From Sminthopsis crassicaudata (taxonomy: Eukaryota): a DNA stretch of 64,000 bases. Under the pieces are notes generated by a model, which saw only the letters and a list, made by a program, of their open reading frames with translations, did no database searches and was not told the DNA's origin. This document shows, piece by piece, positions 2,386 to 57,939 of the stretch. Both the position numbers and the translations under genes were made by a program. Numbering within the stretch: the first letter of the stretch is position 1; each line of letters opens with the position of its first letter. The stretch covers positions 637,772,558-637,836,557 of the forward strand of contig NC_133619.1 in assembly GCF_048593235.1 (NCBI RefSeq). Reading direction: 5' to 3'.

Positions 2386-2439
2386 TAAGAAAACACAAAA
2401 AAATCGAAGGCCTGTCTGTTGTTTTGTAGTTGTTTTCTG

Positions 2440-5040: not shown

Positions 5041-5848
5041 TTGGTCTTCTGTCCTCTTTCTAGATTTTTAAAAATTATTTTGTATTTAGGTCAATAAAAA
5101 AGATGTGCTAGCAATAATCTAATTATTAATTACCCAGAAGCTAAGTCTGTTGAACTTTTTATGTCATAGTAAGCAGGTAATAAGACATCATCAGAGTGAA
5201 AGTCACTGTATCCTATTATCTCTTTAGGAAGTGTGAAGGGTCCCTGATTAAATTGGAAGGGAATCCAAGCATTGGATACTTGAAAATCGGATATGACCTC
5301 GGTATCTCTGAGAAGACAAAGCCTGCTGCCTTTGATGAGAGCTAAGCAGTTCTAGGAAGAAGTTTGATTCCCAACTTTGTGAATCACAGCACTTTCACTT
5401 CTACCAGAGGAAAGGGCAGGGCCATAGTGGAGCCAGTGATTGATTTTTTCCCTCCCTCCATCATCAAGCCATGACTTTTTGCAGAGGCACTATTAATATA
5501 GGAGGATATGCCATAACCAATTCAAAATCTGGTTTAGCCCACAACTCCCTGGGTTGCTTCTGGACTCAGTCAGTCTTCCACCATGAAATGGCCTTTTTCA
5601 CTCTAAATGTTTCACAGGTAGTCAGTAACCATTTATTAAATGCTTACTGGATTTCAGGCATTAAGCTCTAGAAATTAAAAAAAAAAAAAAAAAGGTAAGG
5701 AATAATCATCTGATGGATGAATTCATCACTGAATCTTTTTTTTCAGGAAACACCAGTGCCACCCAAGCTGATTTTAAAATTTATTTTAATAGTATTTTAT
5801 TTTTTCCAAATACATGCAAAGATAGTTTGGTTCCCCCCCCCCCCCAAG

Positions 5849-5974
5849 TTGGGGTTAAGTGACTTGCCCAGGGTCACACAGCTAGGAAGTGTTAAGTGTC
5901 TGAGACCACATTTGAACTCCGGTCCTCCTGAATTCAAGGCTGGTGCTCTATCCACTTCACCACCTAGCTGCCCC
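5849..5974 (-). mobile_element. tRNA-derived marsupial SINE (WSINE1-like)
   Basis: The reverse complement reads ggggcagctaggtgg...gagttcaaatgtggtctcagacacttaacacttcctagctgtgtgaccctgggcaagtcacttaacccc. Direct repeats gatagttt flank it at 5821-5828 and 5975-5982. A copy lies at ~32893-33018. Confidence 0.85.
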
Positions 5975-6009
5975 GATAGTTTTTTTTTTAATTAAAATTT
6001 TTTATTTTC

Positions 6010-7784
6010 TCCAAAGAGATCTTAAAGGAGGGAAAGGACCCACAGGTTAAAAAAAATGTGTGTACTATCCCTTTTAGTAGTAGCAAAAAACTGGAAATTG
6101 AGTAGATGGATGCCCATCAATTGCAGAATGGCTGAATAAATTGTGGTATATAAATGTTATGGAATGTCATTGTTCTGTAAAAAATGACCAGCAGGATGAT
6201 TTCAGAGACGTCTGGAGAGACTTACATGAACTGATGCTGAGGGAAGTAGAAGTAGGAGATCATTGTACACATTGATCAATTCTGATGGTAGTGGCTCTCT
6301 TCAACAATGAGATGACTCAAACCAGTTCCAATGATCTTGTGATAGAGAGAGCCATTTGCCCTCAGAGAAGGGACTGTGGGAATTGAGTGTGGATCACAAC
6401 ATAGTGTTTTCACTCTTTGTTTGTTGTTTACTTGCATTTTATTTTCTTAAAGTTTTTTTCCTTTTTATTATGCCCAAAAAGTTATCAAACTGTGTATATC
6501 CTTTGATCCAGCACTGCTACTACTGGGCTTATATCCCAAGGAAATAATACTAAAGAAGGGAAAGGGACCTGTATGTGCCAAAATGTTTGTGGCAGCCCTT
6601 TTTGAAGTGGCTAGAAACTGGAAAATGAATGGATGCCCCTTAATTGGAGAATGGTTGGGTAAATTATGGTATATAAATGTTATGGAATGTTATTGTTCTG
6701 TAAGAAATGACCAGCAGGATGAATACACGGAGGCTTGGAGAGACTGACAGGAACTGATGCTGAGTGAAATGAGCAGAACTGGGAGATCATTATACACTTC
6801 AACAACAATACTATATGAGGATGTATTCTGATGGAAGTGGATATCTTCAACATAGAGAAGATCTAATCCAGTTCCAATTGATCAATGATGGACAGATTCA
6901 GCTACACCCAGAGAAGGAACACTGGGATATGAATGTAAACTGTTTGCATTTTTTTTTTTTGCTCCCCAGCTTATTTTTACCCTCCGAATCCAATTCTTCC
7001 TTTGCAACAACAACAACAACAAAAATTTGGTTCTGCACACATATATTGTACCTAGGATATACTATAACATATTTAATATGTATAGGAGTGCCTGCCATCT
7101 AGGGGAGGGGGTGGAGGGAAGGATGTGAAAAATTCGGAACAGAAGGGAGTACAAGGGATAATGTTGTAAAAAATCTGTGCATATGTACTGTCAAAAAAAG
7201 TTATAATTATAAAATTAATTTAAAAAAATAAATAAATAAAAGTTTTTTCTTTTTGATTTGATTTTTCTTGTGTGTGAAGCAAGATAATTGTATAAGTATG
7301 TATGCATATATTGAATTTAATGTATATTTTACATGCTTAACATATATTAGATTACTTGCCATCTAGGGGAGAGGATGGAGGAAACAGGGGGGGAAACTGA
7401 AACACAAGATTTTCAAGGGTTAATGTGGAAAAATAATCCAACCATATATTTTTTCTTTTTTTCCCCCAAGCATATATTTTTAAAAAGCTTTAATAAAAAA
7501 CTTTTTATTTTCAAAATATATGCCTATCGTTTCAACAATGAGTTGATTTGGGCCATTTCCAATGATCTTGTGATAGAGACAGTCATTTGCACCTAGTGAA
7601 AGGACTGTGAGAAATCAGATTGCATCACAACATAGTGTTTTCACTCTTTTTGTTGTTGTTTGCTTGCATTTTGTTTTCTTTCATATTTTTTTCCTTTTTG
7701 ATCTGGTTTTTCTTGTGCAGTATGATCATTGTGGAAATAAGTATAGAAAAATTACACATGTTTAACATATATTGGATTGCTTGC
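6010..7784 (+). mobile_element. Nested L1 3' fragments
   Basis: Several ORF2 C-terminal and 3'UTR pieces. A younger piece (~6478-7240, ending in an A-rich tail) sits inside an older L1 3'UTR. Duplicated at ~33055-34825. Confidence 0.8.
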
Positions 7785-13298: not shown

Positions 13299-16200
13299 TT
13301 TTTTTTCTTTTTTTTTATTTATTTAATTTAATTTTTAAAAATTTTTAAATTTTATAATTATAAAATTTTTGACAGTAAAAATGCATGAGTAATTTTTTAT
13401 AACATTATCCTTTGTATTAATTTTTCCAAATTTTCCCCTCCCTCCCTCTACTTTTTTTTTTTTTCATTTTTATTTTATAATTATAACATTTTTTTGACAG
13501 TACATATGCATGGGTAATTTTTTACAACATTATCCCTTGCACTTACTTCTATTCAGATTTTTTCCCTTCCTCCCCCAACCCCCTCCCCCAGATGGCAATC
13601 AGTCTTATATATGTTAAATATATTACAGTATATTCTAGATACAATATATGTGTGTAGAACCGAATTTCTTGTTGCACAGGAAGAATTGGATTCAGAAGGT
13701 AAAAATAACAGTTTACACTCATTTCCCAGTGTTCCTTTCCCGGATGTAGCTGGTTCTGTCCATCATTAATCAATTGGAATTGGATTAGCTCTTCTCTATG
13801 TTGAAGAAATCCACTTCCATCAGCATACATCCTCGTACAGTATCATTGTTGAAGTGTATAATGATCTTCTGGTTCTGCTCGTTTCACTCAGCATCAGTTG
13901 ATGTAAGTCTCTCCAAGCCTCTCTGTATTTCTCCTGTTGGTCATTTCTTATAGAACAATAATATTCCATAACATTCATATACCATAGTTTACCCAACCAT
14001 TCTCCAATTGATGGACATCCATTCATCTTCCAGCTTCTAGCCACTATGAAAAGGGCTGCCACAAACATTTTGGCACATACAGGTCCCTTTCCCTTCTTTA
14101 GTAGTTCCTTGGGGTATAAGCCCAGTAGTAGTATGGCTGGGTCAAAGGGTATGCACATTTTGATAACTTTTTGAGCATAATTCCAGATTGCTCTCCAGAA
14201 TGGTTGGATTCTTTCACAACTCCACCAACAATGCATCAGTGTCCCAGTGTTCCCACAGCCCCTCCAACATTCATCATTATTTGTTCCTGTCATCTCAGCC
14301 AATCTGACAGGTGTGTAATGATACCTCAGAGTTATCTTAATTTGCATTTCTCTGATCAATAGTGATTTGGAACACTCTTTCATATGAGTGGAAATAGTTT
14401 TAATTTCATCATCTGAAAATTGTCTGTTCATATCCTTTGACCATTTATCAATTGGAGAATGGCTTGATTTCTTATAAATTAAAGTTAATTCTCTGTATAT
14501 TTTGGAGATGAGGCCTTTATCAGAACCTTTAACTGTAAAAAATTTTTCCCAATTTGTTACTTCCCTTCTAATCTTGTTTGCATTAGTTTTGTTTGTGCAG
14601 AAACTTTTTAATTTGGTGTAATCAAAATGTTCTATTTTGTGATCAATAATGGTCTCTAGTTCTCCCTTGGACACAAACTCCTTCCTCCTCCACAAGTCTG
14701 AGAGGTAAACCATCCCATGTTCCTCCAATTTATTTATGATTTCGTTTTTTATGCCTAAATCTTGGACCCATTTTGATCTAATCTTAGTATGTGGTGTTAA
14801 ATGTGGGTCCATGCCTAGTTTCTGCCATACTAATTTCCAGTTTTCCCAGCAGTTTTTGTCAAATAATGAATTCTTATCCCAAAATTTGGGATCTTTGGGT
14901 TTGTCAAAGATTAGATTGCTATTTTTATTCACTATCTTGCCCTGTGAACCTAACCTATGCCACTGATCAACTAGTCTATTTCTTAGCCAATACCAAATGG
15001 TTCTGGTGACTGTTGCTTTATAATATAGCTTTAAATCAGGTACACTTAGACCACCTTCCTCTGGCTTTTTTTTCATTAGTTCCCTTGCAATTCTCGACCT
15101 TTTATTCTTCCATATGAATTTTGTTGTTGTTTTTTCTAGGTCATTAAAATAGTTTCTTGGGAGTCTGATTGGTATAGCACTAAATAAATAGATTAGTTTG
15201 GGGAGTATTGTCATCTTTATTATATTCTCTCGGCCTATCCAAGAACACTGAATGTCTTTCCAATTATTTAAATCTGACTTTATTTTTGTGGCAAGTGTTT
15301 TGTAATTTTGCTCATATAATTCCTGACTCTCCTTTGGTAGATATATTCCCAAATATTTTATACTATCGACTGTTATTTTGAATGGAATTTCTCTTTGTAT
15401 CTCTTGCTGTTGGATTGTGTTGGTAATGTATAAAAATCCTGAGGATTTATGTGGATTTATTTTGTATCCTGCGACTTTGCTAAAATTCTGAATTATTTCT
15501 AATAGCTTTTTAGCAGAGTCTTTGGGGTTCTCTAAGTATACCATCATGTCATCTGCGAAAAGTGACAATTTGATTTCTTCATTTCCTACTCTAATTCCTT
15601 GAATCTCTTTCTCGGCTCTTATTGCCGAAGCTAGAGTTTCTAGTACTATATTGAATAGTAATGGTGATAGTGGGCAACCTTGTTTCACTCCTGATCTTAC
15701 AGGGAAAGGTTCTAGTTTATCACCATTACATATGATGTTTACTGAAGGTTTTAAATATATGCTCCTTATTATTTTAAGGAATAGTCCATTTATTCCTATA
15801 CTCTCAAGCGTTTTTAGTAGGAATGGATGTTGGATTTTATCAAATGCCTTTTCTGCATCTATTGAGATGATCATATGGTTTTTATTAATTTGATTATTAA
15901 TATGGTCAATTATATTAATAGTTTTCCTAATATTAAACCAGCCTAATATTAAATCCCACTTGGTCATAGTGCATTATCCTGGGGATGATTTTCTGAAGTC
16001 TATTTGCTAATATCTTATTTAAGATTTTAGCATCAATATTCATTAAGGAAATTGGTCTATAGTTTTCTTTCTCAGTTTTTGATCTACCTGGTTTAGGTAT
16101 CAGTACCATGTCTGTGTCATAGAAGGAATTTGGTAGGACTCCTTCAATCCCTATTTTTTCAAATAGTTTACATAGCATTGGAGTTAGTTGTTCTTTAAAT

Positions 16201-18339
16201 GTTTGGTAGAATTCACCTGTAAATCCATCTGGTCCTGGGGACTTTTTCTTAGGAAGTTGGTTAATAGCTTGGTCTATTTCTTTTTCTGAGATGGGACTAT
16301 TTAGACTACTTACTTCTTCCTCTGTTAATCTGGGCAAGCTATATTTTTGGAGGTATTCTTCCATTTCATTTAAGTTATCGAATTTATCGGCATAAAGTTG
16401 AGCAAAGTAGCTCCTAACTATTGTTCTAATTTCCTCTTCATTAGTGGTGAGTTCACCCTTTTCATTTTCAAGACTATCAATTTGCTTTTTCTCTTTCCTT
16501 TTTTTAATCAGGTTTACTAAGGGTTTGTCTATTTTGTTGGTTTTTTCATAAAACCAACTCTTAGTTTTATTAATTAATTCAATAGTTTTTTTACTTTCAA
16601 TTTTATTAATCTCACCTTTTATTTTTTGAATTTCAAGTTTTGTGTTTGTCTGGGGGATTTTAATTTGTTCCTTTTCTAGCAATTTTAGTTGTAAGCCCAG
16701 TTCGTTGGCCCTCTCTTTCTCTATTTTATGCAAGTAGGCCTGTAGAGATATAAAACTTCCCCTTATTACTGCTTTGGCTGTATCCCACACATTTTGGTAT
16801 GATGTCTCATTATTGTCATTTTCTTGGGTGAAGTTATTAATTATGTCTATGATTTGCTGTTTTACCCAATCATTCTTTAGTATAAGATTATTTAGTTTCC
16901 AATTATTTTTTGGTCTATTTTCCCCTGGCTTTTTATTAAATGTTATTTTGATTGCATTATGGTCTGAAAAGGATGCATTTACTATTTCTGCCTTGCTGCA
17001 TTTGATTTTGAGGTTTTTATGCCCTAGTATATGATCAATTTTTGTATAGGTTCCATGAACTGCTGAGAAGAAAGTATATTCCTTTCTGTCTCCATTTAGC
17101 TTTCGCCAAAGATCTATCATATCAAACTTTTCTAGTATTCTATTTACCTCTTTGACTTCTTTCTTATTTATTTTGTGGTTTGATTTATCTAATTCTGAGA
17201 GTGCAAGGTTGAGATCTCCTGCTATTATAGTTTTGCTATCTATTTCCTCTTGCAGCTCTCTTAATTTCTCTTTTAAGAATTTAGATGCTGCACCACTTGG
17301 TGCATACATGTTTAATATTGATACTGCTTCACTATTGATGCTGCCCTTTAGCAGGATATAATGCCCTTCCTTATCTCTTTTAATTAGATCGATTTTTGTT
17401 TTTGCTTGATCTGAGATGAGGATGGTTACTCCTGCTTTTTTTGCTTTTGCCTGAAGCATAATAGATTCTGCTCCACCCTTTTACTTTTAGTTTGAATGTC
17501 TCACCCTGTTTCAGGTGTGTTTCCTGTAAACAACATATAGTAGGACTCTGACTTTTAATCCAGTCTGCTAACTGCTTCCTCTTTATGAGGCAGTTTGCCC
17601 CATTCACATTTATGGTTAGAAGGACTAATTCTATATTGCTTGCCATCCTATTAACCCCTGCTTATGCTTTTCCCCTTTCCTTCCCTTTTACCCTCCTATC
17701 CAGTATTAAACTGGTGAACACCACTTGCTTTTCACAGCCCTCCCTTTTTAGGATCCCTCCCCCACCTTAAAGATCCTCCCCTTATTTTACCCCTTTTCCT
17801 CGAAATTACTGTATTCCCTTGCCCTTAGCTTACTCCTTCCCTTTCACTTTTCAATGAAGTGGAAGAAGTTTCACCATAAATCGAATATGTCTATTGATAC
17901 ACGCTATGTTCATCTCCCTCCTTTCTTTCTCTCAGATATAATAGGTTACCTTTGCCTCTTCATGAGATGTAGTACCACCACTTTACACTTTTTTATGATA
18001 TAATCTCCTTTCCACCTCTAGTTGCTAAGACAAATTGTACATATGTTCTTTACATATTTTTTTGACAGAAGTATAGTTCTCAAGATTTCTTTTTACCTTT
18101 TTAGAAATCTCTTGAGTTCTGTATTTGAAGATCAAACCTTTTATGTAGGTCTGGTTTTTTCATCAAAAATAGATGGAATTCATTTATTTCGTTAAATGTC
18201 CATCTTCTTCCCTGGAAAACGATGCTCATTCTTGCTGGGTAAGTTATTCTTGGCTGCATACCAAGTTCCTTAGCCTTTCGGAATATCATGATCCAGGCCC
18301 TTCGTTCTTTTAATGTGGACGCTGCTAGATCCTGGGTTA
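13299..18339 (-). mobile_element. 5'-truncated young LINE-1 (ORF1 C-terminus, spacer, ORF2, 3'UTR, double A-tail), unit 1 copy
   Basis: TSD atggag(a/c)tctaatt at 13285-13298 and 18340-18353, and an ORF1 tail at 18101-18338 (AKELGMQPRITYPARMS). ORF2 EN, RT and C-terminal domains are present. An empty paralogous site atggaactctaattcaacaa lies at 25421-25440. Confidence 0.97.
13820..17646 (-). pseudogene. L1 ORF2 (endonuclease / reverse transcriptase), disrupted by two frameshifts
   Basis: The N-terminus 17646-~17450 (INVNG, CCLQETH) is separated by a +1 frameshift at the T-run 17445-17448. A second, net -8 bp lesion lies at 15944-15950 in the [14 protein letters not shown] motif. The RT motifs [10 protein letters not shown] and LFADDM are intact. 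Confidence 0.93.
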
Positions 18340-19503
18340 ATGGAGCTCTAATTCAACAATATATTATCCCACAGCACTGTGATGATGTTTCTCCACACTC
18401 ATGGGGATGTTGTTGATGAGCAAAGCTCCTCCCTCTTTTCCATCCTCAAACAGTCAAACCCAAAGGCACTGTGTGGGCCACAGGTTAAATCTTTTCACTC
18501 TCAAGGATAGTAGAGATGCCATATCTGGACTCTAACAACATAGGCCCAGATGTGCTAAAAGAGGGGAAGATATTTGGCTAAAGAGTCACTGGGTAGAGGG
18601 ACAGCTCAATGGCAGTAGATAGAGCACCGGCCCTGAAGTGAGGATGACCTGAGTTAAAATCCAGCCTCAGACACTTATCACTTCCTAATTGACTCAAGTC
18701 AATTAATACCAAATGTAACTCCTGTGGACTGTGTGTGACACTTCGTGAGTGTGCCATGTGTCACCTGGATCACAGCAGCTGTGTAAGAAGTCTAAGTCAT
18801 CAATTTTAGTGTCATCATCCTGAAAACCCCCAGAAAATCAGTGTCCCTTGATTCATTGGGGGGGAGGGGAGAGGGAGGATCCAGCCTCAGACACTTACCA
18901 CTTCCTACTTGTGTGGGCAAGTCAATTAATACCAAATGCCTCTGTAAAAAGGGAAAAGTTAATTAAGAATCTTGGGTAAAGCAGAGGAAAGATGTGGAGG
19001 AAATTGATAGGTTAAGAAAAGGGAGAAGGAGGAAGTTGAGAGTGAAAGATTGGAAAGGAGACAGAGGAAAAAGAGAGAGATGCGCTGGAGGAGGAGGAGT
19101 GGCAGAGACAGATCCAAGGGAGAAAGTAGGGGGGGGGGAAAGTGGGGGTGATGGGTACCGGGGAGGCGGTGTGTCCTCTTAGAGCAGCCAGCTGGATGCT
19201 GGGGTTGGGAGAGCCAGTCAAGTTATAACTCCCAGGTGCTGGAATCCCATTGCCCACCCCTGCCCCTTATCTCTTCCTGGCCAGGTTTTCCCCTTCCCAC
19301 AAGGGAAGAAAGAAGGGGCGAAAAAAAGGAGGGGATGTGTGGACAGGGACAGGCTGGAGGTCTGAAAGGGGAGATGAGCCGGAAAGAGGCCAGGAGAAGG
19401 GAAGGTGCGCCCCAACCTGAGCGAGCGCAGGAGCTGCTGCTTTTGTGGAACCACTGGCTACAAGAGCCGCTTGCTGTCAGTCTGCCTTGGGCTGGACCTT
19501 GCT

Positions 19504-19640
19504 CTTTCAGTTTTCCTTTCCTGGTACCCGCCCTTCTTACCTGCAGACACCTGGCCCCGCCCCTTTCGCAGCGGGATTTTTGGAATCTGTTTCCACTTTT
19601 CATACATCAGGGGAATCTCCGGCTCGGCCGCTTAAAACTG
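19504..19640 (+). promoter_or_regulatory. Proximal promoter of IFNL copy 2: PRDIII-like IRF site, NF-kB site, TATA-like element
   Basis: ctttcagttttcctttcc at 19504-19521 contains GAAAACTGAAAG on the - strand. GGGAATCTCC at 19611-19620 fits GGGRNNYYCC, and ttaaaa follows. Identical motifs occur in copy 3 (27750-27767, 27857-27866), copy 4 (46554-46571, 46661-46670) and copy 5 (54800-54817, 54907-54916). Confidence 0.75.
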
Positions 19641-19691
19641 CAGGGATGAAGCGGTCTCCTGCATCACTTGCCACCTCCCTTCTCCAAGGCC

Positions 19692-21014
19692 ATGAGGACT
19701 CCGCAGACTCTCTCGCTGCTGCTTTGTGCCCTGATGTCAGGGGCGATTTCGAAGTCCCTGGCCCCGACTCCCAGCAGCCTTCCCCCCGAGAGGAGCTGCC
19801 AGATCAGCCACTTCAAGTCTCTTTCGCCTCGGGAGCTGGAAACCTTCAAGGTGGCCCAGAATGCCTACGTGAGTTCCTGGAGTGATTTTTGTACCCCACT
19901 CCTCCCATCCCTCACTTCCCGGGGTCTAACCTCGATCTCTTTTACTGGGCTCTAATACTCATCTCTCGCACTGAGATCTAACCTTCATCCTTCCTTCTTG
20001 AGCTGTCGCTTTCTCTGTTCTAACCTCCGTCCTACATCGCAAGGATCTAGAAGGGTCACAAGCCTTTAACTCCTTCCTCTTCATCCCCCAAAGGAGAAGA
20101 TCATGATTCAGACGGAGAGGAAATGTAGCTCCCGATTCTTCCACAGAAACTGGGACCTTCGGCAGCTGCCGGTAAGAAGGGGCGCTCCCCACCTCTCAGT
20201 CCCCCATCGCCTGTCTCCGAAATCTGTAGCCTCCCCATTTCTCTTCCCCCATCTGTGGGTCCTCCCCGCCTTCCCCTGTCCCCTTCATTAGCCTCTCCCT
20301 CACATCGCCTCTCATCTCTCCCCTCACAGCCGTCCGTCCGGCCCCTGGTCTTACAGGCTGAGCTGAAATTGACTCTGGACGTCTTGAAAGCCGTAACCAA
20401 GCCTGAGCTGGACAGAGTTCTGGCTCAACCCCTACAAACGCTCAGCCACATCTACCAAGAGATCCAAAGCTGTGTGAGTACTGGAGGATGGGCGGGGCTC
20501 CCCTGGACCAATGGGCATGGAGCTGTTCCCTGTCTCTCAGGCGCCTCTGTCCCTTGCAGTGAGGCTGAGAGGCTGCAATACCTGGATTCCTCCCTCTCCC
20601 CCCACCCATCAAGTACCCGAGTTCCCCTTCTCTTTTATCAAGTCCACCCTCTCCCTACACAGGTTACTTCCAGGCCCTCTAAGGAACACAGGCCTCCAGG
20701 CCGCCTGAAGAATTGGCTGAACAAGCTCAGTGAGGCCAGAAAGGTGAGTCAGGAAAGCTTCAGATCTACGGAGGGCACCCGGGGATGGAGGGGAGAAGTC
20801 AGAGGGGACCCCAGAGCCTGGGCAGCAAGAGACTCTGCCCACCCCACCCCCACCCCGAGAGAGGAGCAGGACTCAGAATTCCCCAGAGGACCCTTACCCC
20901 TGTGTCTCTTCTCTTCAGGAGCCTCACAATTGCCTAGAAGCATCGATCATGCTCAATCTCTTCAGACTCCTGACCCAAGACCTCCGATGTGTAGCCTATG
21001 GGGACCTCTGTTGA
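19692..21014 (+). CDS. IFNL: Interferon lambda copy 2, 5 exons, 191 aa; canonical B-type
   Basis: Exons 19692-19868, 20094-20171, 20330-20473, 20663-20743 and 20919-21014 have GT-AG introns. It retains SCQISHF and the canonical helix F LNLFRLLTQDLRCVAYGDLC*. Confidence 0.96.
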
Positions 21015-24000
21015 AGATGCAGACCCAGCCTGAAGTCTGAGCCTGGACTTTTGCACTCCAAACTTTATTTATGGACCAATACCCTTCTAGTATATTTATT
21101 CCCTCCATCCCAACAACCACATACTTTATATGCCAGAGGATAGTTTTGTACTTTTGTATTTTTCTATATTTTGTTAAATAAATAAGAAAACACAAAGAAA
21201 TTGAAGGCCTGTCTGTTGTTTTGTAGTTGTTTTCTGTGTTACAGTTTATGGCTATAAGCAAGTGTGATTGTGGGTTTTTTTGTGTAGCTGTGAGCAGGCA
21301 GGATTGTGAGTGTTTATATGTGTATGTAGTTGTAGGTTTGGGTATGGCTGTGAGCTGGTGGGATTATGGATTTGTATGTATGGCTATAAGGGGGAATGGG
21401 GGAATGTGTTCAGTGACCTGTATCTCAGTGTGGGTGCAGTCTGGGTCTCCTTTGACCTTGTGTGTGGGCTGCACTTAGCTGGGAAGATAGTACCTGGGAT
21501 GGAAAATTAGATGATTGCATCGAATAGGGTCTCTAGAAAATCAATACTGGCTGACTCTGAGTGAGCCCCTTGGGCATAGGTAATAGGGACCGGGCAGTCA
21601 GGGTGCCCTCTTAGACGAACCAGCTGGATGCTGGGGTTGGGAGACCATTAGACATAAGGAGACTTCTTGATTCAGTGTCCTCCCATCAGAAAGAAGACAG
21701 TCCATGGGATTTGTGCATATTGCCTCCCTTGCAGAACAAAGACCTTATGGTATTTACACATAACTTGGTTCTTCCTCTTCCCCAATCAGATCAATTGAAG
21801 ATAGAGCATAAAGTAAGGGGGGAGCAGAAAACAGGGTAATGAGGGAAATGCTTATTAAATAACAAATTAATGCAGAGATTTCTGACCTTACCCAGAATAT
21901 GGACTACCTATCATGTCAAGTTGCAGTTGTTTCCCCATCCAAATAGAAAAACCTTTCAAAGAGATTCTAGTCCCAAGAAATCCAACCTTCTCTGTTTTAG
22001 TCTGCCAAAACTGAGTAGAGGCAGACCCCCTTTTGTCAAGACTTCCCATGTAGAGGTAGTTTGGATAAGAGTGAAGTCCCTTTGTCTAAGACCAAGTGAT
22101 CCAATCAAGTTCCCCCATTCTCTCATTAGAATAAGCCCACCTCTCATTATAATATTCATTCTTCTCATTAATTGTTTCCTATCACAGTTATTGCCATCAT
22201 TAAGAACAACTAGTCTTCCAAGTTTATATGAGCATTGATTCAGTTCCATGAGCAGTCTTTGGCACTCAGTAATGCCACTGACCCAAATGTGAAAGGCCAC
22301 TTTTAAATCATTAGTTGTTTTATATATGTGTGTATTGGGGGGGGAGTGGGGGTGTGAATATATACATATATATATATATATCTATATATATATATATATC
22401 TATATATATCTATCTTGATTGACAGTAGCTTACTTGGGAGAGGTGAAGGGAGAATAAAAGTGTAACCTATAGGGAAACAAAGATAAACCCTCATGAATAT
22501 ATTTTCTATTGTTATATATGCCTTTTCGAAATGAAAATGTATTATTCTATATTTTGAATCCTCACTGATGTTCTGCTGAGTACATGACAATGTGTTTTTT
22601 CTTTTTCTGTCCTTTTTCTTTTTTAAGTTAAAGTACATGTTAAATCCGATATATGTGTACATATTTATACTGTTATCTTGCTACACAAGAAAAATCAGAT
22701 CAAGAGGGAAGAAAAAGAAAAACTGAGAAAGAAAACAAAATGCAAGCAAATAACAACAGAGAGAGTGAGAATGCTATGCTGTGGTCCATACTCTGCTCCC
22801 ACAGTCTTCTCTCTAGTGTAGATGGGTTCTCTTCATCACTGAACAAGTGGAACTGGTTTGAATCATCTCATTGTTGAAGAGAGCCAGGTCCATCAGAATT
22901 GATCATCCAATAATCTTGTTGTTGCCATGTATGATGATCTCCTGGTTCTGCTCATTTTTCCCAGCATCAGTTCATGTAAGTCTCTCCAAGCCTCTCTGGC
23001 ATCAACTTGGTGGTCGTTTCTTGCAGAACAATAATATTCCAAAACATTCATACACCATAAATTATTCAGCCATTCTCCACCTGACGCACATCTGCTCAGT
23101 TTCCAGTTTCTTCCCACTATGAAAGGGCTGTCCCAAACCTTTTTGCACACGTGGGTCTCTTTTCCTCCTTTAAGCCCTCCTTGGGATATAAGTCCAGTAG
23201 AAACACTGCTGGGTCAAAGAATATGCACAGTTTGATAACTTTTGGACCATAGATCCTAATTTTTCTCCAGAATGGTTACATTTATTTACAGTTCCACCAA
23301 CAATGCTTCAGTGTCCCAGTTTCCCACATCCCCTCCAACATTCATCATTATCTTTTCCTGTCATCTTAGCAAATCTGAGAGGTGTGTAGAGGTATCTCAG
23401 AGTCATCTTAATTTGCTTTTCTCTGATCAATTGTGATTTGGAGTACCTTTTTATGTGACTAGAAATAGTTTTAATTTTTTCATCTGAAAATTGTTCATAT
23501 CCTTTGACCATTTATCAATAGAGGAATGGCTTGAACTATTATAAATTTGAGTCAATTCTCTATATATTTTAGAAATGAGGCCTTTATCAGAACTTTTGGA
23601 TGTAAAAATATTTTCCCAATTTATTGATTCCCTTCTAATCTTATGATCGATTTTCTCTTTCTGTATTGGTTTATTCACTTCTACAGGTCTTTAGCATCTT
23701 ATCTGTGTTTTCTACATGATGAAATACAAGTTGCCTCATCCCTAAAGTTTATATTATACATTAAATATCTCTATGAGTTGGGGGCTGTATTGCCTACATT
23801 TAGAGGAAATGAGTCATGGGCTATGTTTTATTTTGGAGTTTTTCCTGAATTAAATCTGGATGTCTGGGGTAAGATTAAAGTAAAGAAACTGATTTCTTTG
23901 GAGTCCTTCAGATTAGTTATATGTAGATTAAATCATTTAAAATTAGGAAAAAATATGATGGGCAATCAAAGCAGTCTTCCCCATTGAAAAGAGTTATTGA

Positions 24001-27248: not shown

Positions 27249-27937
27249 GTCACTGGGTGGAGCGGCAGCTCAATGTCAGTGAATAGAGCATGGGCCTTGA
27301 AGTCAGGATAACCTGAGTTCAGATCCCGCCTCAGATACTTAACACTTCCTACCTGTGTGGGCTAGTCAATTAACCCCAAATGGCTCTGTAAAAAGGGAAA
27401 AGCTAATTAAGTCTTGAGTGGAGAAGAGGAAAGATGTGGGGGAAATTGATAGGGTAAGAAAGGGGAGAAGGAGGAAGCTGAGAGTAAAAGATTAGAGGGG
27501 AGACAGAGGAAAAAGGAAGAGATGCGTTGGAGGAGGAGTGCCGGCATAAAGAGATCCTAGGGAGAAAGAAGGGAAGGAAAAGGAGGAGGGGTGTGGGCAG
27601 GAATACCCTGGAGATCTGAAAAGGAAATCTGAAAGTCGGGAGGAGAGAAGGTGCGCCCCAACCTGAGCGAGCGCAGGAGCTGCTGCTTTTGTGGAATCAC
27701 TGGCTACAAGAGCCGCTTGCTGTCAGTCTGCCTTGGGCTGGACCTTGCTCTTTCAGTTTTCCTTTCCTGGTACCCGCCCTTCTTACCTGCAGACACCTGG
27801 CCCCGCCCCTTTCGCAGCGGGATTTTTGGAATCTGTTTCCACTTTTCATACATCAGGGGAATCTCCGGCTCTGCCGCTTAAAAGTGCAGGGATGAAGCGG
27901 TCTCCTGCATCACTTGTCACCTCACTTCTCCAAGGCC

Positions 27938-29264
27938 ATGAGGACTCCGCAGGCTCTCCCGCTGCTGCTTTGTGCCCTGATGTCAGGGGCAATTTCGAAG
28001 TCCCTGGCCCCGACTCCCAGCAGCCTTCCCCCCGAGAGGAGCTGCCAGATCAGCCACTTCAAGTCTCTTTCGCCTCGGGAGCTGGAAACCTTCAAGGTGG
28101 CCCAAAATGCCTACGTGAGTTCCTGGAGTAATTTTTGTACCCCACTCCTTCCATCCCTCACTTCCCGGGGTCTAACCTCGATCTCTTTTACTGGGCTCTA
28201 ATACTCATCTCTCGCACTGAGACCTAACCTTCATCCTTCCTTCTTGAGCTGTCGCTTTCTCTGTTTCTAACCTCCGTTCTACATCGCAAGGATCTAGAAG
28301 GGTCACAAGCCTTTAACTCCTTCCTCTTCATCCCCCAAAGGAGAAGATCATGATTCAGACGGAGAGGAAATGTAGCTCCCGATTCTTCCACAGAAACTGG
28401 GACCTTCGGCAGCTGCCGGTAAGAAGGGGCGCTCCCCACCTCTCAGTCCCCCATCGCCTGCCTCCGAAATCTGTAGCCTCCCCATTTCTCTTCCCCCATC
28501 TGTGGGTCCTCCCCGTCTCCTTCCCCTGTCCCCTTCATCAGCCTCTCCCTCACATCGCCTCTCATCTCTCTCCTCACAGCCGTCCGTCCGGCCCCTGGTC
28601 TTACAGGCTGAGCTGAAATTGACTCTGGACGTCTTGAAAGCCGTAACCAAGCCTGAGCTGGACAGAGTTCTGGCTCAACCCCTACAAACGCTCAGCCACA
28701 TCTACCAAGAGATCCAAAGCTGTGTGAGTACTGGAGGATGGGCGGGGCTCCCCTGGACCAATGGGCATGGAGCTGTTCCCTGTCTCTCAGGCGCCTCTGT
28801 CCCTTGCAGTGAGGCTGAGAGGCTGCAATACCTGGATTCCTCCCTCTCCCCCCACCCATCAAGTACCCGAGTTCCCCTTCTCTTTTATCAAGTCCACCCT
28901 CTCCCTACACAGGTTACTTCCAGGCCCTCTAAGGAACACAGGCCTCCAGGCCGCCTGAAGAATTGGCTGAACAAGCTCAGTGAGGCCAGAAAGGTGAGTC
29001 AGGAAAGCTTCAGATCTACGGAGGGCACCCGGGGATGGAGGGGAGGAGTCAGAGGGGACCCCAGAGCCTGGGCAGCAAGAGACTCTGCCCACCCCACCCC
29101 CACCCCGAGGGAGGAGCAGGACTCAGAATTCCCCAGAGGACCCTTACCCCTGTGTCTCTTCTCTTTAGGAGCCTCACAATTGCCTAGAAGCATCGATCAT
29201 GCTCAATCTCTCCGGAATCCTGATCCAAGACCTCCGATGTGTAGCCTATGGGGACCTCTGTTGA
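27938..29264 (+). CDS. IFNL: Interferon lambda copy 3, 5 exons, 191 aa; chimeric (exons 1-4 like copy 5, exon 5 like copy 1)
   Basis: Exons 27938-28114, 28341-28418, 28580-28723, 28913-28993 and 29169-29264. It has SCQISHF but helix F LNLSGILIQDL. Confidence 0.95.
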
Positions 29265-32200
29265 AGATGCAGACTCAGCCTGAGGTCTGAGCTGGACTTT
29301 TGCACTCCAAACTTTATTTATGGACCAACACCCTTCTAATATATTTATTCCTTCCACTCCCCAACAACCACATACTTTATATGCCACAGGATAGTTTTGT
29401 GCTTTTGTATTTTTTTTTCTATATTTTGTTAAATAAATAAGAAAACACAAAAAAAATGAAGGCCTGTCTGTTGTTTTGTAGTTGTTTTCTGTGTGACAGT
29501 TTGTGGCTATAAGCTAGTGTGGTTGTGGATTTCTGTGTATCTGTGAGCAGGTGGGATTGTGGATTTGTGGGTTTGTGTGTGTAATTGAGGATCTGTGTAT
29601 GGCTGTGAACAGGTAGGGTTATGGATTTGTGAGCACAGTTGTGGGTTTGTGTATATAGTCAAAAGGTCTGAGTATGGCCGTGAGCTGTTGGGATTGTGAG
29701 TCTGTCTATGTGTGTGTATGTAGTTGTAGGTTTGTGTATGGCTGTGAGCTGGTGGGATTATGGATTTGTATGTATGGCTATAATGTGGGAATGTGGGAAT
29801 GTGTTCAGTGACCTGGATCTCAGTGTGGGTGCAGTCTGGGTCTCCTTTGACCTTTCTTGTGGGCTCCACTTTGCTGGGAAAGTAGTAGCTGGGATGGAAA
29901 ATTAGATGATTGCATCGAATAGGGTCTCAAGTCAATCAATACTGGCTGACTCTGAGTGAGCCCCTTGGGCATAGGTGATAGGGACCGGGCAGTCAGGGTG
30001 TCCTCTTAGACGAACCAGCTGATTGCTGGAGTTGGGAGACCATTAGACATAAGGAGACTTCTTGATTCAGTGTCCTCCCATCAGAAAGAAGACAGTCCAT
30101 GGGATTTGTGCAGAACAAAGACCTTATGGTATTTACACACTAATTTGGTTCTTCCTCTTCCCCAATCAGATCAATTGAAGATAGAGCATAAAGTAAGGGG
30201 GGAGCAGAAAAGAGTAATGACGGAAATGCTTATTAAATAACAAATTATTGCAGAGATTTCTGACCTTACCCAGAATATGGGCTACCTATCATGTCAAGTT
30301 GCAGTTGTTTCCCCATCCAAATAGAAAAACCTTTCAAAGAGATTCTAGTCCCAAGAAATCCAACCTCTCTGTTTTAGTCTGCCAAAACTGAGTAGAGGCA
30401 GACCCCCTTTTGTCAAGACTTCCCATGTAGGGGTAGTTTGGATAAGAGTGAAGTCCCTTTGTCTAATACTGAGTGATCCAATCAAGTTTCCCCATTCCCT
30501 CATTAGAATAAGCCCACCTCTCATTATAATATTCATTCTTCTCATTAATTGTTAACCTATCACAGTTATTGCCATCCTTAAGAACAACTAGTCTTCCAAG
30601 TGTATATGAGCATTGACTGGATTCTATAAGTGGTCTCTGGCACTCAGAAATGCTTCTGACCCAAAGGGCAAAGACCACTTTAAAATAATTAGCTGCTATA
30701 TGTATATGTGTGTGTGTGTGGGGGGGTGAGTGTGAATATATATATCTGTGCTTACCAGTAGCTTACTTGGGAAAGGTGTAGGGAGAATAAAAGTGTAACC
30801 TACAGGGAACCAAAGGTAAACCCTCATGAATATTTTTTCAATGGTTATATATGCTTTCTTGAAATGAAAATTTTCTACATTTTGAATCTCTCTGATGTTC
30901 TGCTGGGCACATGTTTTGTTTTGTTTTTTACTTTCCTTTTTTGTCCTTTTTCTTTATGTTAAAATACATATTAAATCCAATATATATATTTATACAATAT
31001 ATGTATTTACACATATATTTATACAGTTATCTTGTTGCACAAGAAAAATTAGATCAAGAAGGAAGAAATAGAAAAACTGAGGAAGAAAACAAAATGCAAG
31101 CAAATAATGACAGAGAAAGTGAGAATGCTATGTTGGGGTCCATACTCTGCTCCCACAGTTCTCTCTCTAGTGTAGGTGGGTCTCTACATCACTGAACAAG
31201 TGGAACTGGTTTGAATCATCTCATTGTTGAAGAGAGCCACATCCATCAGAATTGATCATGGTATAGTCTTGTATAATTATCTCCTGGTTCTGCTCATTTC
31301 ACTCAGCATTAGTTCATGTAAGTCTCTCCAAGTCTCTCTGAAATCATACTGCTGATCATTTCTTACAGAACACTCATATTCCATAACATTCAGATACCAC
31401 AATTTATTCAGTCATTCTTTAATTGATGGCCATCCACTCAGTTTCCATTTTCTGGCCACTATGAAAAGAGCTGCCACAAACATTTTTGCAAATGTGGGTC
31501 CCTTTCCCTCCTTTATGATCTCTTTGGAATATAAGCCCAGTAGTAACACTGCTGAATCAAAGGATATGCACAGTTTATAATTTTTTGAGAATAGTTCCAA
31601 AGTGCTCTCCAGAATGGTTGGATTTGTCCACATTTCCAACAATATGGTAACAATATGGTATCAGTGTCCCAATTTTTCCAAATCCCCTTCACCATTCAAC
31701 ATCATCTTTTCCTGTCATCTTGGCTAATCTAGAGGTATGTAGTGTTATCTCAGAATTGTCTTAATTTGCTTTTCTCTGATCAATAGTGATTTGGAGCACC
31801 TTTTCATGTGACTGCAAATAATTTCAATTTCTTCATCTGAAAATTGTCTGTTCATATCCTTTGACCATTTATCACTTGAAGAATGACTTGAACTATTATA
31901 AATTTGAGTCAATTCTCTATATATTTTAAAAATAAGGCCTTTATCATATTCTTTGTATGTGAAGATGTTTTCCCAGTTTATTGCTTCCCTTCTAATCTTG
32001 TCTGCATTAGTTTTGTTTTATCCAATAACTTTTTAACTTAATTTAATGAAAATTATTTATTTTGTAATCAATAATGATCTTCAATTCTTTGGTCTTCTGT
32101 CCTCTTTCTAGATTTTAAAAAATTATTTTGTATTTAGGTCAATAAAAAAGATGTGCTAGCAATAATCTAATTATTAATTACCCAGAAGCTAAGTCTGTTG

Positions 32201-45389: not shown

Positions 45390-46741
45390 ATGGAGCTCTA
45401 ATTCAACAATATATTATCCCACAGCACTGTGATGATGTTTCTCCACACTCATGGGGATGTTGTTGATGAGCAAAGCTCCTCCCTCTTTTCCATCCTCAAA
45501 CAGTCAAACCCAAAGGCACTGTGTGGGCCACAGGTTAAATCTTTTCACTCTCAAGGATAGTAGAGATGCCATATCTGGACTCTAACAACATAGGCCCAGA
45601 TGTGCTAAAAGAGGGGAAGATATTTGGCTAAAGAGTCACTGGGTAGAGGGACAGCTCAATGGCAGTAGATAGAGCACCGGCCCTGAAGTGAGGATGACCT
45701 GAGTTAAAATCCAGCCTCAGACACTTATCACTTCCTAATTGACTCAAGTCAATTAATACCAAATGTAACTCCTGTGGACTGTGTGTGACACTTCGTGAGT
45801 GTGCCATGTGTCACCTGGATCACAGCAGCTGTGTAAGAAGTCTAAGTCATCAATTTTAGTGTCATCATCCTGAAAACCCCCAGAAAATCAGTGTCCCTTG
45901 ATTCATTGGGGGGGAGGGGAGAGGGAGGATCCAGCCTCAGACACTTACCACTTCCTACTTGTGTGGGCAAGTCAATTAATACCAAATGCCTCTGTAAAAA
46001 GGGAAAAGTTAATTAAGAATCTTGGGTAAAGCAGAGGAAAGATGTGGAGGAAATTGATAGGTTAAGAAAAGGGAGAAGGAGGAAGTTGAGAGTGAAAGAT
46101 TGGAAAGGAGACAGAGGAAAAAGAGAGAGATGCGCTGGAGGAGGAGGAGTGGCAGAGACAGATCCAAGGGAGAAAGTAGGGGGGGGGGAAAGTGGGGGTG
46201 ATGGGTACCGGGGAGGCGGTGTGTCCTCTTAGAGCAGCCAGCTGGATGCTGGGGTTGGGAGAGCCAGTCAAGTTATAACTCCCAGGTGCTGGAATCCCAT
46301 TGCCCACCCCTGCCCCTTATCTCTTCCTGGCCAGGTTTTCCCCTTCCCACAAGGGAAGAAAGAAGGGGCGAAAAAAAGGAGGGGATGTGTGGACAGGGAC
46401 AGGCTGGAGGTCTGAAAGGGGAGATGAGCCGGAAAGAGGCCAGGAGAAGGGAAGGTGCGCCCCAACCTGAGCGAGCGCAGGAGCTGCTGCTTTTGTGGAA
46501 CCACTGGCTACAAGAGCCGCTTGCTGTCAGTCTGCCTTGGGCTGGACCTTGCTCTTTCAGTTTTCCTTTCCTGGTACCCGCCCTTCTTACCTGCAGACAC
46601 CTGGCCCCGCCCCTTTCGCAGCGGGATTTTTGGAATCTGTTTCCACTTTTCATACATCAGGGGAATCTCCGGCTCGGCCGCTTAAAACTGCAGGGATGAA
46701 GCGGTCTCCTGCATCACTTGCCACCTCCCTTCTCCAAGGCC

Positions 46742-56313: not shown

Positions 56314-57137
56314 AGATGCAGACTCAGCCTGAAGTCTGAGCCTGGACTTTTGCACTCCAAACTTTATTTATGGACCAATACCCTTCTAGTATATTTATTC
56401 CCTCCATCCCAACAACCACATACTTTATATGCCAGAGGATAGTTTTGTACTTTTGTATTTTTCTATATTTTGTTAAATAAATAAGAAAACACAAAAAATT
56501 TGAAGGCCCGTCTGTTGTTTTGTAGTTGTTTTCTGCGTGACAGTTTGTGGCTATAAGCCAGTGTGGTTGTGGGTTTCTGTGTGTAGCTGTGAGCAGGTGG
56601 GATTGTGGATTTCTGGGTTTGTGTGTGTAATTGTAAATCAGTGTATGGCTGTGAACGGGTAGGGTTATGGATTTGTGAGCCCAGTTGTGGGTTTGTGTAT
56701 TTAGTCATAGGTCTGTGTATGGCTATGAGTTGGTGGGATTGTGAGTGTCCATGTGTGTGTGTGTGTACTTGCAGGGTTGTGCATGGCTGTGAGCTGGTGG
56801 GATTGTGGGTTTGTAATGTGGCTATAAGTGGGACTGTAGAATATAGGTGTCTGTGTGCAGTGACCTGGATCTCAGTGCTCAGAGGCAGGGGTGCAGTCTG
56901 GGTCTCCTCTGACCTTGCTTGTGGGCTCCATTTTGCTGGGAAGGTAGCACCTGGCCTGGAAGATTAGATTGCAGGGAATAGGGGTTCCAGTCAATCAATA
57001 CTGGCTGACCCTGAGTGAGCACCTTGGGCACAGGTGATGGGTACTGGGGAGGCGGTGTGCCCTCTTAGAGGAGCCAGCTGGATGCTGGGGTTGGGAGAGC
57101 CAGTCAGGAGGGGTCAAGTTAAGACTACCAGGTGCTT

Positions 57138-57377
57138 CTACTGTCTATCTACCCAGGTTACTTATACCTTCGGAATCTAATACTTATGTGCAACAAGAAA
57201 ATGGTATTTACACACATATATTGTATCTGGGTTATATTGTAACACATGTAAAATGTATGGGATTGCCTGTCATCGGGGGGAGGGAGTGGAGGGAGGGAGG
57301 GGATAATTTGGAAAAATGGATACAAGGGATAATGTTATAAAAAAAAATTACTTATGCATATATACTGTGGAAAAAAA
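57138..57377 (+). mobile_element. Short L1 3'UTR fragment inserted in the SYCN promoter
   Basis: Perfect 17-bp TSD aagactaccaggtgctt at 57121-57137 and 57378-57394, with L1 3'UTR-like sequence and an A tail. Confidence 0.9.
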
Positions 57378-57394
57378 AAGACTACCAGGTGCTT

Positions 57395-57477
57395 GAATCC
57401 CATTGCCCACCCCTGCCCCTTATCTCTTCCTGGCCAGGTTTTGCTCTTCCCACAATCTCTCCCACGGCTCTTATAAG
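57395..57477 (+). promoter_or_regulatory. SYCN proximal promoter: GATA motif, RBPJ-type TTCCCACA, TATA box
   Basis: ttatct near 57420, cttcccacaa near 57446-57455 and TATAAG at 57472-57477, about 55 bp before the ATG. Confidence 0.6.
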
Positions 57478-57528: not shown

Positions 57529-57939
57529 ATGGCACCATTTCTCTTGCCTTCGCTCCTCCTGTTGGCCCTTCTGAGGGCTCTGCCAGGCACCTGGGCTGCG
57601 TGTCCGGTCCCTGCCACCCTGAAGCCCACCGAGGGACCCCGAGAATGTGCCCGCCTTTATGAGAAGAGTGACGCCTACTATGAGAATTGCTGTGCCGGAG
57701 CTCAGCTGAGCCTGGAGCCCGGGGTCGACCTGCCGTACCTGCCCTCCGACTGGTACCACAAAGCGTCCTCCCTGGTGGTGGGTCCCCGCTGTGAGCTCAC
57801 AGTCTGGTCTCGCTCCGGCAAAGGTGGCAAGACCCGAAAGTTCTCATCCGGAGCCTACCCTCGGCTGGCGGAGTTTCGCCTCGGAATATTTGGCGATTGG
57901 AATAACGCCATAGGGGCTCTCTACTGCAAGTGCTACTAA
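57529..57939 (+). CDS. SYCN: Syncollin, 136 aa, single coding exon
   Basis: Signal peptide plus the recognisable syncollin sequence ([31 protein letters not shown]...[16 protein letters not shown]...GKT.KFS.G.YPRL...R.GI.GDW.NAI.ALYC.C). It is syntenic with IFNL and NCCRP1. Confidence 0.97.

What the first reader, a model, noticed from the sequence alone, without database searches (positions are those of the whole stretch)
19147..19302. SYCN proximal promoter captured into the promoters of IFNL copies 2 and 4
Seen: 19147-19302 (and 46197-46352) matches the SYCN upstream region 57033-57455 minus its L1 insert, stopping just before the SYCN TATA box. It is flanked by imperfect repeats caaggga(a)gaaag and is absent from copies 1, 3 and 5. 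It brings E-boxes CAGCTG (19189-19194) and CAGGTG (19233-19238), a GATA motif (19267-19272) and an RBPJ-type TTCCCACA to ~400-550 bp upstream of the IFNL ATG. It lacks the 240-bp L1 now in the SYCN promoter, so the capture is older than that insertion. Established: SYCN is a pancreatic acinar granule gene, and acinar genes use bHLH (PTF1A), RBPJ/RBPJL and GATA factors. Inference: B-type IFNL may have gained tissue-specific or basal expression by promoter borrowing.
Basis: partly seen in the sequence, partly recalled or inferred. Interest (0 to 1): 0.7.

Follow-up and report, generated by a model that had tools for sequence, protein, structure and literature searches.

The report
Neighbour's promoter piece copied into interferon-lambda promoter
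A 156-base piece of the promoter of the pancreatic granule gene SYCN really was copied into the upstream region of one interferon-lambda gene in the dunnart lineage and later doubled by a large duplication, but nothing available shows that it changes where that interferon is made.

Summary
Window 19147-19302 and 46197-46352 are identical. Both are a copy of the syncollin (SYCN) upstream region, 57033-57137 plus 57395-57457, ending 15 bp before the SYCN TATA box. The copy is a clean insertion relative to IFNL copies 1, 3 and 5. It has a 17/18-bp target-site repeat, 14 filler bases and a 3-bp junction microhomology.

New here:
- Tasmanian devil and antechinus carry the same sequence uninterrupted in their SYCN promoters, so SYCN is the source.
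- The devil's positional orthologue of the recipient gene has the empty target site, so the insertion arose on the dunnart lineage.
- Copies 2 and 4 are one event, doubled by a recent 27-kb duplication.
- The SYCN insert is a 5'-truncated LINE-1 tail, absent from three other dasyurids.
- Independent read contigs reproduce all three junctions.

The copy shares no clear derived change with today's dunnart SYCN promoter, so it is old. It has changed less than a neutral model predicts, which is a weak hint of constraint.

The functional reading is untested. No RNA run was available, and public dunnart RNA-seq has no pancreas or gut. The named E-boxes and TTCCCACA are too far apart for a canonical PTF1 site.

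Most likely this is a microhomology-mediated templated insertion with unproven, probably small, regulatory effect. Modest interest.

The parts
19147..19302 (+). Captured copy of the SYCN proximal promoter (source positions about -240 to -75 from the SYCN ATG). It lies -545 to -390 from the ATG of IFNL copy 2 (B type).
46197..46352 (+). The same block upstream of IFNL copy 4. It is identical because it lies in the second unit of the 27-kb tandem duplication.
19116..19132 (+). Left copy of the duplicated target site, AAGGGAGAAAGTAGGGG (46166-46182 in copy 4).
   Evidence: The single-copy 'empty' site is seen in dunnart copies 1 and 5 and in the devil orthologues.
19133..19146 (+). 14-base filler GGGGGGAAAGTGGG between the left repeat and the block. 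It resembles a slipped partial third copy of the target.
   Evidence: read-laying table 5c gives the same letters in run X1.
19301..19318 (+). Right copy of the duplicated target site, AAGGGAAGAAAGAAGGGG. Its first bases (C)AA overlap the end of the SYCN homology, giving a 3-bp microhomology.
57033..57137 (+). Source, distal part of the SYCN proximal promoter. It includes CAGCTG and the first copy of the CAGGTG E-box.
57138..57379 (+). 5'-truncated LINE-1 3' end with an A tail, inserted into the dunnart SYCN promoter. The 15-bp target-site duplication gactaccaggtgctt lies at 57123-57137 and 57380-57394.
   Evidence: homology to 13489-13709 on the minus strand and to 7017-7173. Searches show APE and RT open reading frames in the element at 13820-17459 (minus strand). 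The insert is absent in devil and antechinus and in run X6 (joint 57123>57381).
57395..57457 (+). Source, proximal part of the SYCN promoter (GATA-type TTATCT and TTCCCACA). The copied stretch ends here, before TATAAG at 57472-57477.
57529..57939 (+). SYCN (syncollin) single-exon coding sequence, 136 aa.
   Evidence: (PF15138; 86-100% identical to marsupial syncollins)
19692..21011 (+). IFNL copy 2 (B type) coding region, from the ATG to the last codon before the stop. Its exons cover PF15177 profile positions 1-156.
   Evidence: Exons were scanned one by one and not joined.
19403..21200 (+). Tract 96-100% identical per 100-bp window (mostly 98-100%) to copy 5, taken as gene conversion. The flanks are only 80-90% identical. 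The block lies about 100 bp upstream of this tract, in old flank DNA.
21579..21647 (+). One of four old (81-86%) partial copies of the first 66-70 bp of the same SYCN upstream sequence, each downstream of an IFNL gene. The others are at 2922-2990, 29974-30042 and 48629-48697.

Best explanation
This is a single copy-and-paste event, not a transposition. About 166 bp of the SYCN proximal promoter, lying about 11 kb downstream on the same strand, were copied into the distal promoter of the middle interferon-lambda gene (B type). The copied stretch ran up to about 15 bp before the TATA box. The junctions have a 3-bp microhomology (CAA), 14 filler bases that look like a slipped copy of the target, and a 17/18-bp duplication of the target. 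They lack a poly(A) tail. This fits a replication or repair template switch (FoSTeS/MMBIR-type templated insertion). That mechanism is inferred from the junctions and is not shown directly.

The insertion happened on the dunnart lineage after its split from the devil/antechinus lineage. It happened before the LINE-1 insertion and before all seven dunnart-specific substitutions in the source promoter. Much later, unequal crossing-over between copy 5 and copy 1 duplicated 27 kb. That made the identical second block (copy 4) and the chimeric copy 3.

The block carries no TATA box or start site. If it acts at all, it can only act as an upstream enhancer-like module about 170 bp 5' of the IRF/NF-kB response elements. 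My reading is that it is mainly a passenger. I put about 30% on some measurable regulatory effect and about 10-15% on SYCN-like tissue expression of this interferon.
For: Shown:
- Identity and clean-insertion structure.
- The same sequence is contiguous in the SYCN promoters of devil (L001/L002 9762-9927) and antechinus (L003 9767-9927), and recognisable in koala (L004 9742-9918). The gene order IFNL-SYCN-FBXO is conserved.
- Devil L002 is collinear with dunnart 46438-58000. Its second IFNL gene is therefore the positional orthologue of B, and it has the single, unoccupied target site at 903-924.
- Parsimony over 155 columns gives 2 block-only substitutions plus a 10-bp deletion and 7 changes unique to the dunnart SYCN promoter. 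There are 5 sites where block and dunnart SYCN differ from devil and antechinus. Four of those are ancestral by the koala outgroup.
- Contigs of run X1 reproduce the three junctions (54623>57033 with GGGGGGAAAGTGGG, 57106>57381 with AGTTATA, 57455>54689), and the depth there is not repeat-like.
- The 27-kb duplication and the chimeric copy 3.
- The B gene is intact across PF15177.
- There is no Rfam match and no stable fold.

For a possible function: under a neutral rate taken from dunnart-devil intergenic divergence, the joint probability of at most 1 shared derived change and at most 2 block-only substitutions is below 0.01 for any insertion time.
Against: - The template-switch mechanism is inferred from junction anatomy only. 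Non-homologous end joining that captured a free fragment would look similar.
- The devil B orthology rests on collinearity in one assembly. L002 and the newer L001 differ structurally upstream.
- The antechinus B orthologue lay outside the fetched 10 kb.
- Run X1 may come from the same animal as the assembly.
- The constraint hint rests on very few substitutions. It assumes a constant promoter rate and a neutral rate taken from gap-containing BLAST identities. A late burst of change in the LINE-disrupted source promoter would mimic it.
- No expression, accessibility or binding data exist for either reading.
Confidence: 0.75

Rival explanations
1. Functional promoter borrowing. The block works as a tissue-specific upstream module that gives B-type IFNL basal or SYCN-like expression in pancreatic acinar cells, gut epithelium or neutrophils.
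For: The block is most of a real, conserved proximal promoter of an acinar gene. All four named motifs are intact in it. It has changed less than the three real SYCN promoters did (2 versus 7-9 substitutions) and less than a neutral model predicts. The first 400 bp upstream of B and of copy 5 are otherwise nearly identical from 19403 on, so the block is the main upstream difference. Sycn tracks Ptf1a in mouse acini (PMC6778080).
Against: The block has no TATA box or start site. The E-box to TC-box distances (62 and 106 bp) fall outside the one to three turns required for PTF1. CAGCTG is not conserved among dasyurids, and the mouse promoter has no E-box. Motif counts are near chance. A 10-bp deletion removed conserved bases (GTCAGGAGGG). 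Older 66-70-bp copies of the same promoter behind IFNL copies 1-4 have simply decayed. No RNA run was available, and public dunnart RNA-seq lacks pancreas and gut.
Confidence: 0.15
2. The block is ancestral to IFNL promoters and was deleted from copies 1, 3 and 5 by recombination between the short direct repeats.
For: Direct repeats flank the block. Such repeats can mediate deletion.
Against: The devil B and C orthologues, dunnart A and C, and the 10 kb upstream of SYCN in antechinus and koala all lack it. The orthologous sites examined carry the single target sequence. The block is 88-93% identical to dasyurid SYCN promoters, whereas the B/C flanks are about 86% identical. This reading would need several independent precise deletions.
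Confidence: 0.03
3. The block is a dispersed repeat, a retrocopy or an assembly artefact.
For: The window is rich in LINE-1 and duplications. The first 66-70 bp recur four more times.
Against: Those recurrences sit at the same relative place behind IFNL copies 1-4 and end at one old breakpoint, 57102. The depth in X1 over 56967-57093 is about 18, against about 5e5-1e6 over the LINE-1. There is no poly(A), and the copied part lies upstream of the start site. The block differs from its source at 9 substitutions and an indel, so it is not a mis-join of reads. The X1 contigs span the junctions.
Confidence: 0.03

Closest known systems
Microhomology-mediated templated insertions (FoSTeS/MMBIR-type template switching; short local templated insertions at repair junctions)
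   Same: A short stretch is copied from a nearby template on the same chromosome and in the same orientation. There are a few bases of microhomology at a junction, filler bases and a short duplication of the target. There is no poly(A) and no transposon ends.
   Different: Those mechanisms are mostly described from human disease rearrangements and tumour genomes, and from memory rather than from a paper read here. This one is a fixed, old event whose template happens to be a promoter. The mechanism cannot be shown from one junction pair.
Regulatory co-option by inserted DNA (for example transposon-derived promoters and enhancers that gave genes new tissue expression), and enhancer or promoter duplication
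   Same: Foreign cis-regulatory DNA is placed upstream of a gene and could add transcription-factor sites.
   Different: The donor is the neighbouring gene's own promoter, not a mobile element. No change in expression has been shown.
PTF1 (PTF1A/E-protein/RBPJ or RBPJL) bipartite sites of acinar gene promoters
   Same: The block holds E-boxes and one TTCCCA core, and it comes from an acinar gene.
   Different: The spacing rule is not met for the named motifs. The only correctly spaced pair, CAGGTG-N4-GGAATCCCA, has an imperfect TC-box that is not kept in koala.
Passenger promoter fragments carried by the IFNL tandem duplications in the same window
   Same: They have the same source sequence and lie in the same locus.
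   Different: Those are 66-70 bp, lie downstream of the genes and have decayed to 81-86%. They arose because a duplication breakpoint fell inside the SYCN promoter, not by insertion.

Membership tests
Templated insertion by template switching (FoSTeS/MMBIR type) | The inserted sequence is a copy of a template elsewhere, and the template is retained | tested here: met
   The source is still at 57033-57457, and it is orthologous to the devil, antechinus and koala SYCN promoters.
Templated insertion by template switching (FoSTeS/MMBIR type) | Microhomology and/or filler bases at the junctions, with no transposon or retroelement hallmarks | tested here: met
   There is a 3-bp CAA overlap at the right junction, a 1-2-bp G overlap at the left junction, and 14 filler bases. 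There is no poly(A), no terminal repeats and no L1 sequence.
Templated insertion by template switching (FoSTeS/MMBIR type) | Arises during replication or break repair | not testable with these tools
   This is a historical event. Only the junction anatomy is available.
LINE-1-mediated retrocopy | A 3' poly(A) tail next to the target-site duplication, and derivation from a transcript | tested here: not met
   There is no A or T run at either end. The copied part lies upstream of the SYCN TATA box and start site.
PTF1 bipartite binding site | An E-box (CANNTG) and a TC-box (TTCCCA core) separated by one to three helical turns (PMC7197352) | tested here: not met
   CAGGTG to TTCCCACA is about 62 bp and CAGCTG to TTCCCACA is about 106 bp. 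The correctly spaced CAGGTG-N4-GGAATCCCA has ATCCCA instead of TTCCCA and reads ATTCCA in koala.
PTF1 bipartite binding site | Bound and activated by PTF1A plus RBPJ or RBPJL | not testable with these tools
   There are no ChIP or reporter data for any marsupial.
Functional (co-opted) cis-regulatory element | Evolves more slowly than neutral DNA | tested here: inconclusive
   There are 2 substitutions in 156 bp, against 7-9 in the real SYCN promoters and about 10-13 expected at the intergenic rate. The joint P is below 0.01 for any insertion time. However, the counts are tiny, the rate assumptions are crude, and the block has a 10-bp deletion.
Functional (co-opted) cis-regulatory element | Changes expression or chromatin of the recipient gene | not testable with these tools
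   No run on record as RNA holds the region. The laid runs behave as DNA. The public dunnart RNA-seq tissues exclude pancreas and gut.
Syncollin gene (for the donor) | PF15138 domain and conserved IFNL-SYCN-FBXO gene order | tested here: met

The most novel reading that the evidence does not exclude
The copied SYCN module is a working enhancer. It gives one dunnart interferon-lambda paralogue constitutive expression in SYCN-positive secretory or barrier tissues (pancreatic acini, gut epithelium, neutrophils). That would be a naturally 'pre-armed' type III interferon, created by borrowing the neighbour's promoter and kept under constraint for many millions of years.
Probability: 0.12. Interest if true: 0.65.

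Novelty: new member of a known kind. Interest (0 to 1): 0.3.

Why it matters
If the block is active, it would be a clean natural example of a cytokine gene gaining tissue-specific input by copying 156 bp of a neighbouring gene's promoter. Built-in controls exist. Copy 5 has nearly the same proximal promoter without the block, and devil has the empty site. That makes it a convenient test case for how small templated insertions rewire regulation, and for whether basal interferon-lambda at secretory epithelia is selectable. If it is inert, which is the more likely case, it is simply a well-dated example of a microhomology-mediated templated insertion in a rearrangement-prone immune gene cluster. 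It is then useful mainly as a phylogenetic marker for the Sminthopsis lineage.

Tried and rejected
1. I asked whether the block marks the 5' edge of the B/copy-5 gene-conversion tract, which would make it one complex event. This was rejected. The high-identity tract starts at about 19403, and the 100 bp after the block are only about 67% identical to copy 5.
2. Retrocopy or LINE-1 transduction was rejected. There is no poly(A) and no L1 next to the block.
3. A structured RNA gene was rejected. There is no Rfam hit (best E 0.8) and the fold z-score is +1.45.
4. The expression test failed. The one run search found no holder on record as RNA. Laying X5, X6, X7 and X1 on 54300-58100 showed patchy intergenic coverage typical of DNA. 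X5 gave one 252-base contig over 57451-57702 that starts upstream of the TATA box, so it is not evidence of an mRNA.
5. I tried to reach more distant IFNL copies in devil and antechinus. This was not possible. Bilby, opossum, Gracilinanus and possum loci returned no DNA because the files were too large.
6. The mouse Sycn promoter was tried as a test of motif conservation. It is barely alignable. Only TTATCT...TTCCCA recur and there is no E-box.
7. A flank-based estimate of the dunnart-B lineage rate gave 13/225 against 2/156 (Fisher P = 0.03). I gave it little weight, because the devil B and C flanks in L002 are 94% alike, which points to concerted evolution or an assembly difference.

Full report
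**What is there**

The window holds five interferon-lambda (IFNL) genes followed by syncollin (SYCN). The SYCN open reading frame is at 57529-57939. It carries PF15138 and is 86-100% identical to marsupial syncollins. Earlier scan notes name the genome as fat-tailed dunnart. This fits the closest relatives found here, Tasmanian devil and antechinus.

A self-comparison shows a 27-kb tandem duplication. Region 395-30042 matches 27424-57102 at 99.06%. Copy 3 matches copy 5 at its 5' end and copy 1 at its 3' end. The duplication therefore arose by unequal crossing-over between copy 5 and copy 1. Before it there were three genes: A (copy 1), B (copies 2 and 4) and C (copy 5, next to SYCN).

**The observation**

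- Window 19147-19302 equals 46197-46352 base for base.
- It matches 57033-57106 at 95.9% and 57381-57455 at 94.7%. Overall identity is 93.0% once the insert in the source is removed.
- In the alignment of the five upstream regions, the block is one clean gap in copies 1, 3 and 5.
- The left target copy AAGGGAGAAAGTAGGGG lies at 19116-19132.
- Fourteen filler bases GGGGGGAAAGTGGG follow at 19133-19146, then the block.
- The right target copy AAGGGAAGAAAGAAGGGG lies at 19301-19318. Its first bases overlap the last bases of the SYCN homology (CAA).
- The 'empty' sites in dunnart A and C and in the devil genes carry the target once.
- The block spans -545 to -390 from the IFNL ATG at 19692.
- The copy stops at 57457, 15 bp before TATAAG at 57472-57477.
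- Contigs of an independent run (X1) reproduce all three junctions, including the filler letters. The depth there is ordinary, unlike the LINE-1 nearby.

**Which way the copy went, and when**

I fetched the SYCN loci of Tasmanian devil (L001, L002), Antechinus flavipes (L003) and koala (L004). In all of them an IFNL gene lies upstream and an F-box gene lies downstream of SYCN.

In devil and antechinus the block sequence is contiguous in the SYCN promoter, at 9762/9767-9927 with the ATG at 10001. Identity to the block is 88-89% by BLAST. Koala is still alignable. SYCN is therefore the ancestral home.

Devil L002 is collinear with dunnart 46438-58000. Its second IFNL gene (971-2551) is thus the positional orthologue of B. 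That gene has the unoccupied target at 903-924. The insertion therefore belongs to the dunnart lineage.

Site-by-site parsimony over 155 columns gives these counts:
- 2 substitutions and a 10-bp deletion unique to the block;
- 7 substitutions unique to the dunnart SYCN promoter;
- 5 sites where block and dunnart SYCN agree against devil plus antechinus.

At four of those five sites koala has the dunnart state, so the change is on the devil/antechinus side. The block shares at most one derived change with its present-day source. The copy was therefore made early on the dunnart branch. The block is in fact about as close to the devil promoter (92.4%) as to the dunnart one (93.0%).

**The insert in the source**

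Region 57138-57379 ends in an A run. It is flanked by a 15-bp duplication, gactaccaggtgctt, which doubles the CAGGTG E-box. It is homologous to the 3' end of an element at 13452 onward on the minus strand. That element's open reading frames carry apurinic-type endonuclease and reverse transcriptase domains. The insert is thus a 5'-truncated LINE-1.

The insert is absent from devil, antechinus and a third dasyurid-like genome. In that genome (run X6) a contig joins 57123 to 57381.

**Older relatives of the block**

The first 66-70 bp also occur at 81-86% identity behind IFNL copies 1-4. The downstream flanks of all IFNL copies are homologous to 56714-57102 and stop at the same point. These are passengers of ancient duplications whose breakpoint fell inside the SYCN promoter. 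They have decayed.

**Mechanism**

The block has no poly(A), no transposon ends and no adjoining L1. The copied DNA lies upstream of the transcription start. A retrocopy or transposition is therefore excluded.

The features that remain are microhomology, filler that resembles a slipped copy of the target, a short target duplication, and a template about 11 kb away in the same orientation. These fit a replication or repair template switch. This is an inference from the junctions, and the comparison with FoSTeS/MMBIR is from general knowledge.

I tested whether the insertion was part of the gene conversion that makes B and C mostly 98-100% alike over 19403-21200 (96% in two windows near the ATG). 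It was not, because the tract starts about 100 bp downstream of the block.

**Function**

B is an intact gene. Its exons, scanned one at a time, cover positions 1-156 of PF15177. This also prevented walking to more distant IFNL genes in other species.

The block lacks a TATA box and a start site, so it could only act as an upstream module.

- Per 156 bp, the window's own frequencies predict 0.72 E-boxes, 0.38 GATA motifs and 0.23 TTCCCA cores.
- A PTF1 site needs an E-box and a TC-box one to three helical turns apart (PMC7197352). The named pairs are 62 and 106 bp apart.
- CAGCTG is CACCTG in devil, CACTTG in antechinus and CAGCCG in koala.
- The mouse Sycn promoter shares only TTATCT...TTCCCA and has no E-box.

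The best-spaced candidate, CAGGTG-N4-GGAATCCCA, has an imperfect TC-box that koala does not keep.

One observation favours some function. The block has changed less (2 substitutions) than any of the three real SYCN promoters (7-9). It has also changed less than the 10-13 substitutions expected at the dunnart-devil intergenic rate. Combined with the lack of shared derived changes, a neutral model has joint probability below 0.01 at every insertion time. The counts are small and the rates crude. A late burst of change in the LINE-disrupted source would give the same picture. I treat it as a hint.

**Expression**

The single run search found no holder on record as RNA. The four runs laid on 54300-58100 behave as DNA. 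The published dunnart RNA-seq covers liver, eye and reproductive, fetal-membrane and neonate samples, but no pancreas or gut (PMC11091235). The functional claim is therefore untested, not refuted.

**Verdict**

It is one old, dunnart-lineage templated insertion of the neighbour's promoter fragment, later doubled. It is a new example of a known kind of event, of modest interest unless expression data show that it matters.

Noticed in passing
window 57123-57394: The LINE-1 tail in the dunnart SYCN promoter duplicated the conserved CAGGTG E-box in its 15-bp target-site duplication. It also pushed the distal half of the promoter 257 bp away. The dunnart SYCN promoter then shows 7 private substitutions. 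Whether SYCN regulation changed is unknown.
   Followed up: partly
window 19403-21200 versus 54720-56520: B and copy 5 are mostly 98-100% identical (96% in two windows near the ATG) through the proximal promoter and all exons, but only 80-90% in both flanks. This is a gene-conversion tract that homogenises the IFNL paralogues.
   Followed up: partly
window 27300-30100: Copy 3 is identical to copy 5 up to about 29100 and copy-1-like after that. This marks the crossover of the 27-kb unequal exchange. The scan had already noted this.
   Followed up: partly
L003:7477-9560: Antechinus has a long array of a roughly 62-bp tandem repeat between its last IFNL gene and SYCN. The repeat is derived from sequence homologous to dunnart 56576-56821. 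It is absent from dunnart and devil.
   Followed up: no
L001 versus L002 (devil), about 1-7500: The two devil assemblies differ upstream of SYCN. The flank of the SYCN-adjacent IFNL gene in L002 is 94% like its B-type neighbour but only 85% like the same position in L001. An indel of about 0.5-1.3 kb follows the B orthologue. This could be structural polymorphism, concerted evolution or an assembly difference.
   Followed up: no
window 13820-17459 (minus strand): A LINE-1 has long open reading frames of 715 and 508 aa, carrying RT and APE endonuclease. It may be a fairly young element. A near-copy of its 3' part lies at 40494-41903 and 62585-64000.
   Followed up: no
L004:9830-9860 (koala SYCN promoter): Where dasyurids have CAGGTGCTGGAATCCCA, koala has CAGGTGCGGGGATTCCA. 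This contains a kappaB-like GGGGATTCC next to the conserved E-box.
   Followed up: no
window 2990, 21647, 30042, 48697 and 57102: The IFNL downstream flanks of copies 1-4 stop being homologous to the copy-5/SYCN intergenic region at the same base, 57102. This is a shared ancient duplication breakpoint inside the SYCN promoter.
   Followed up: partly
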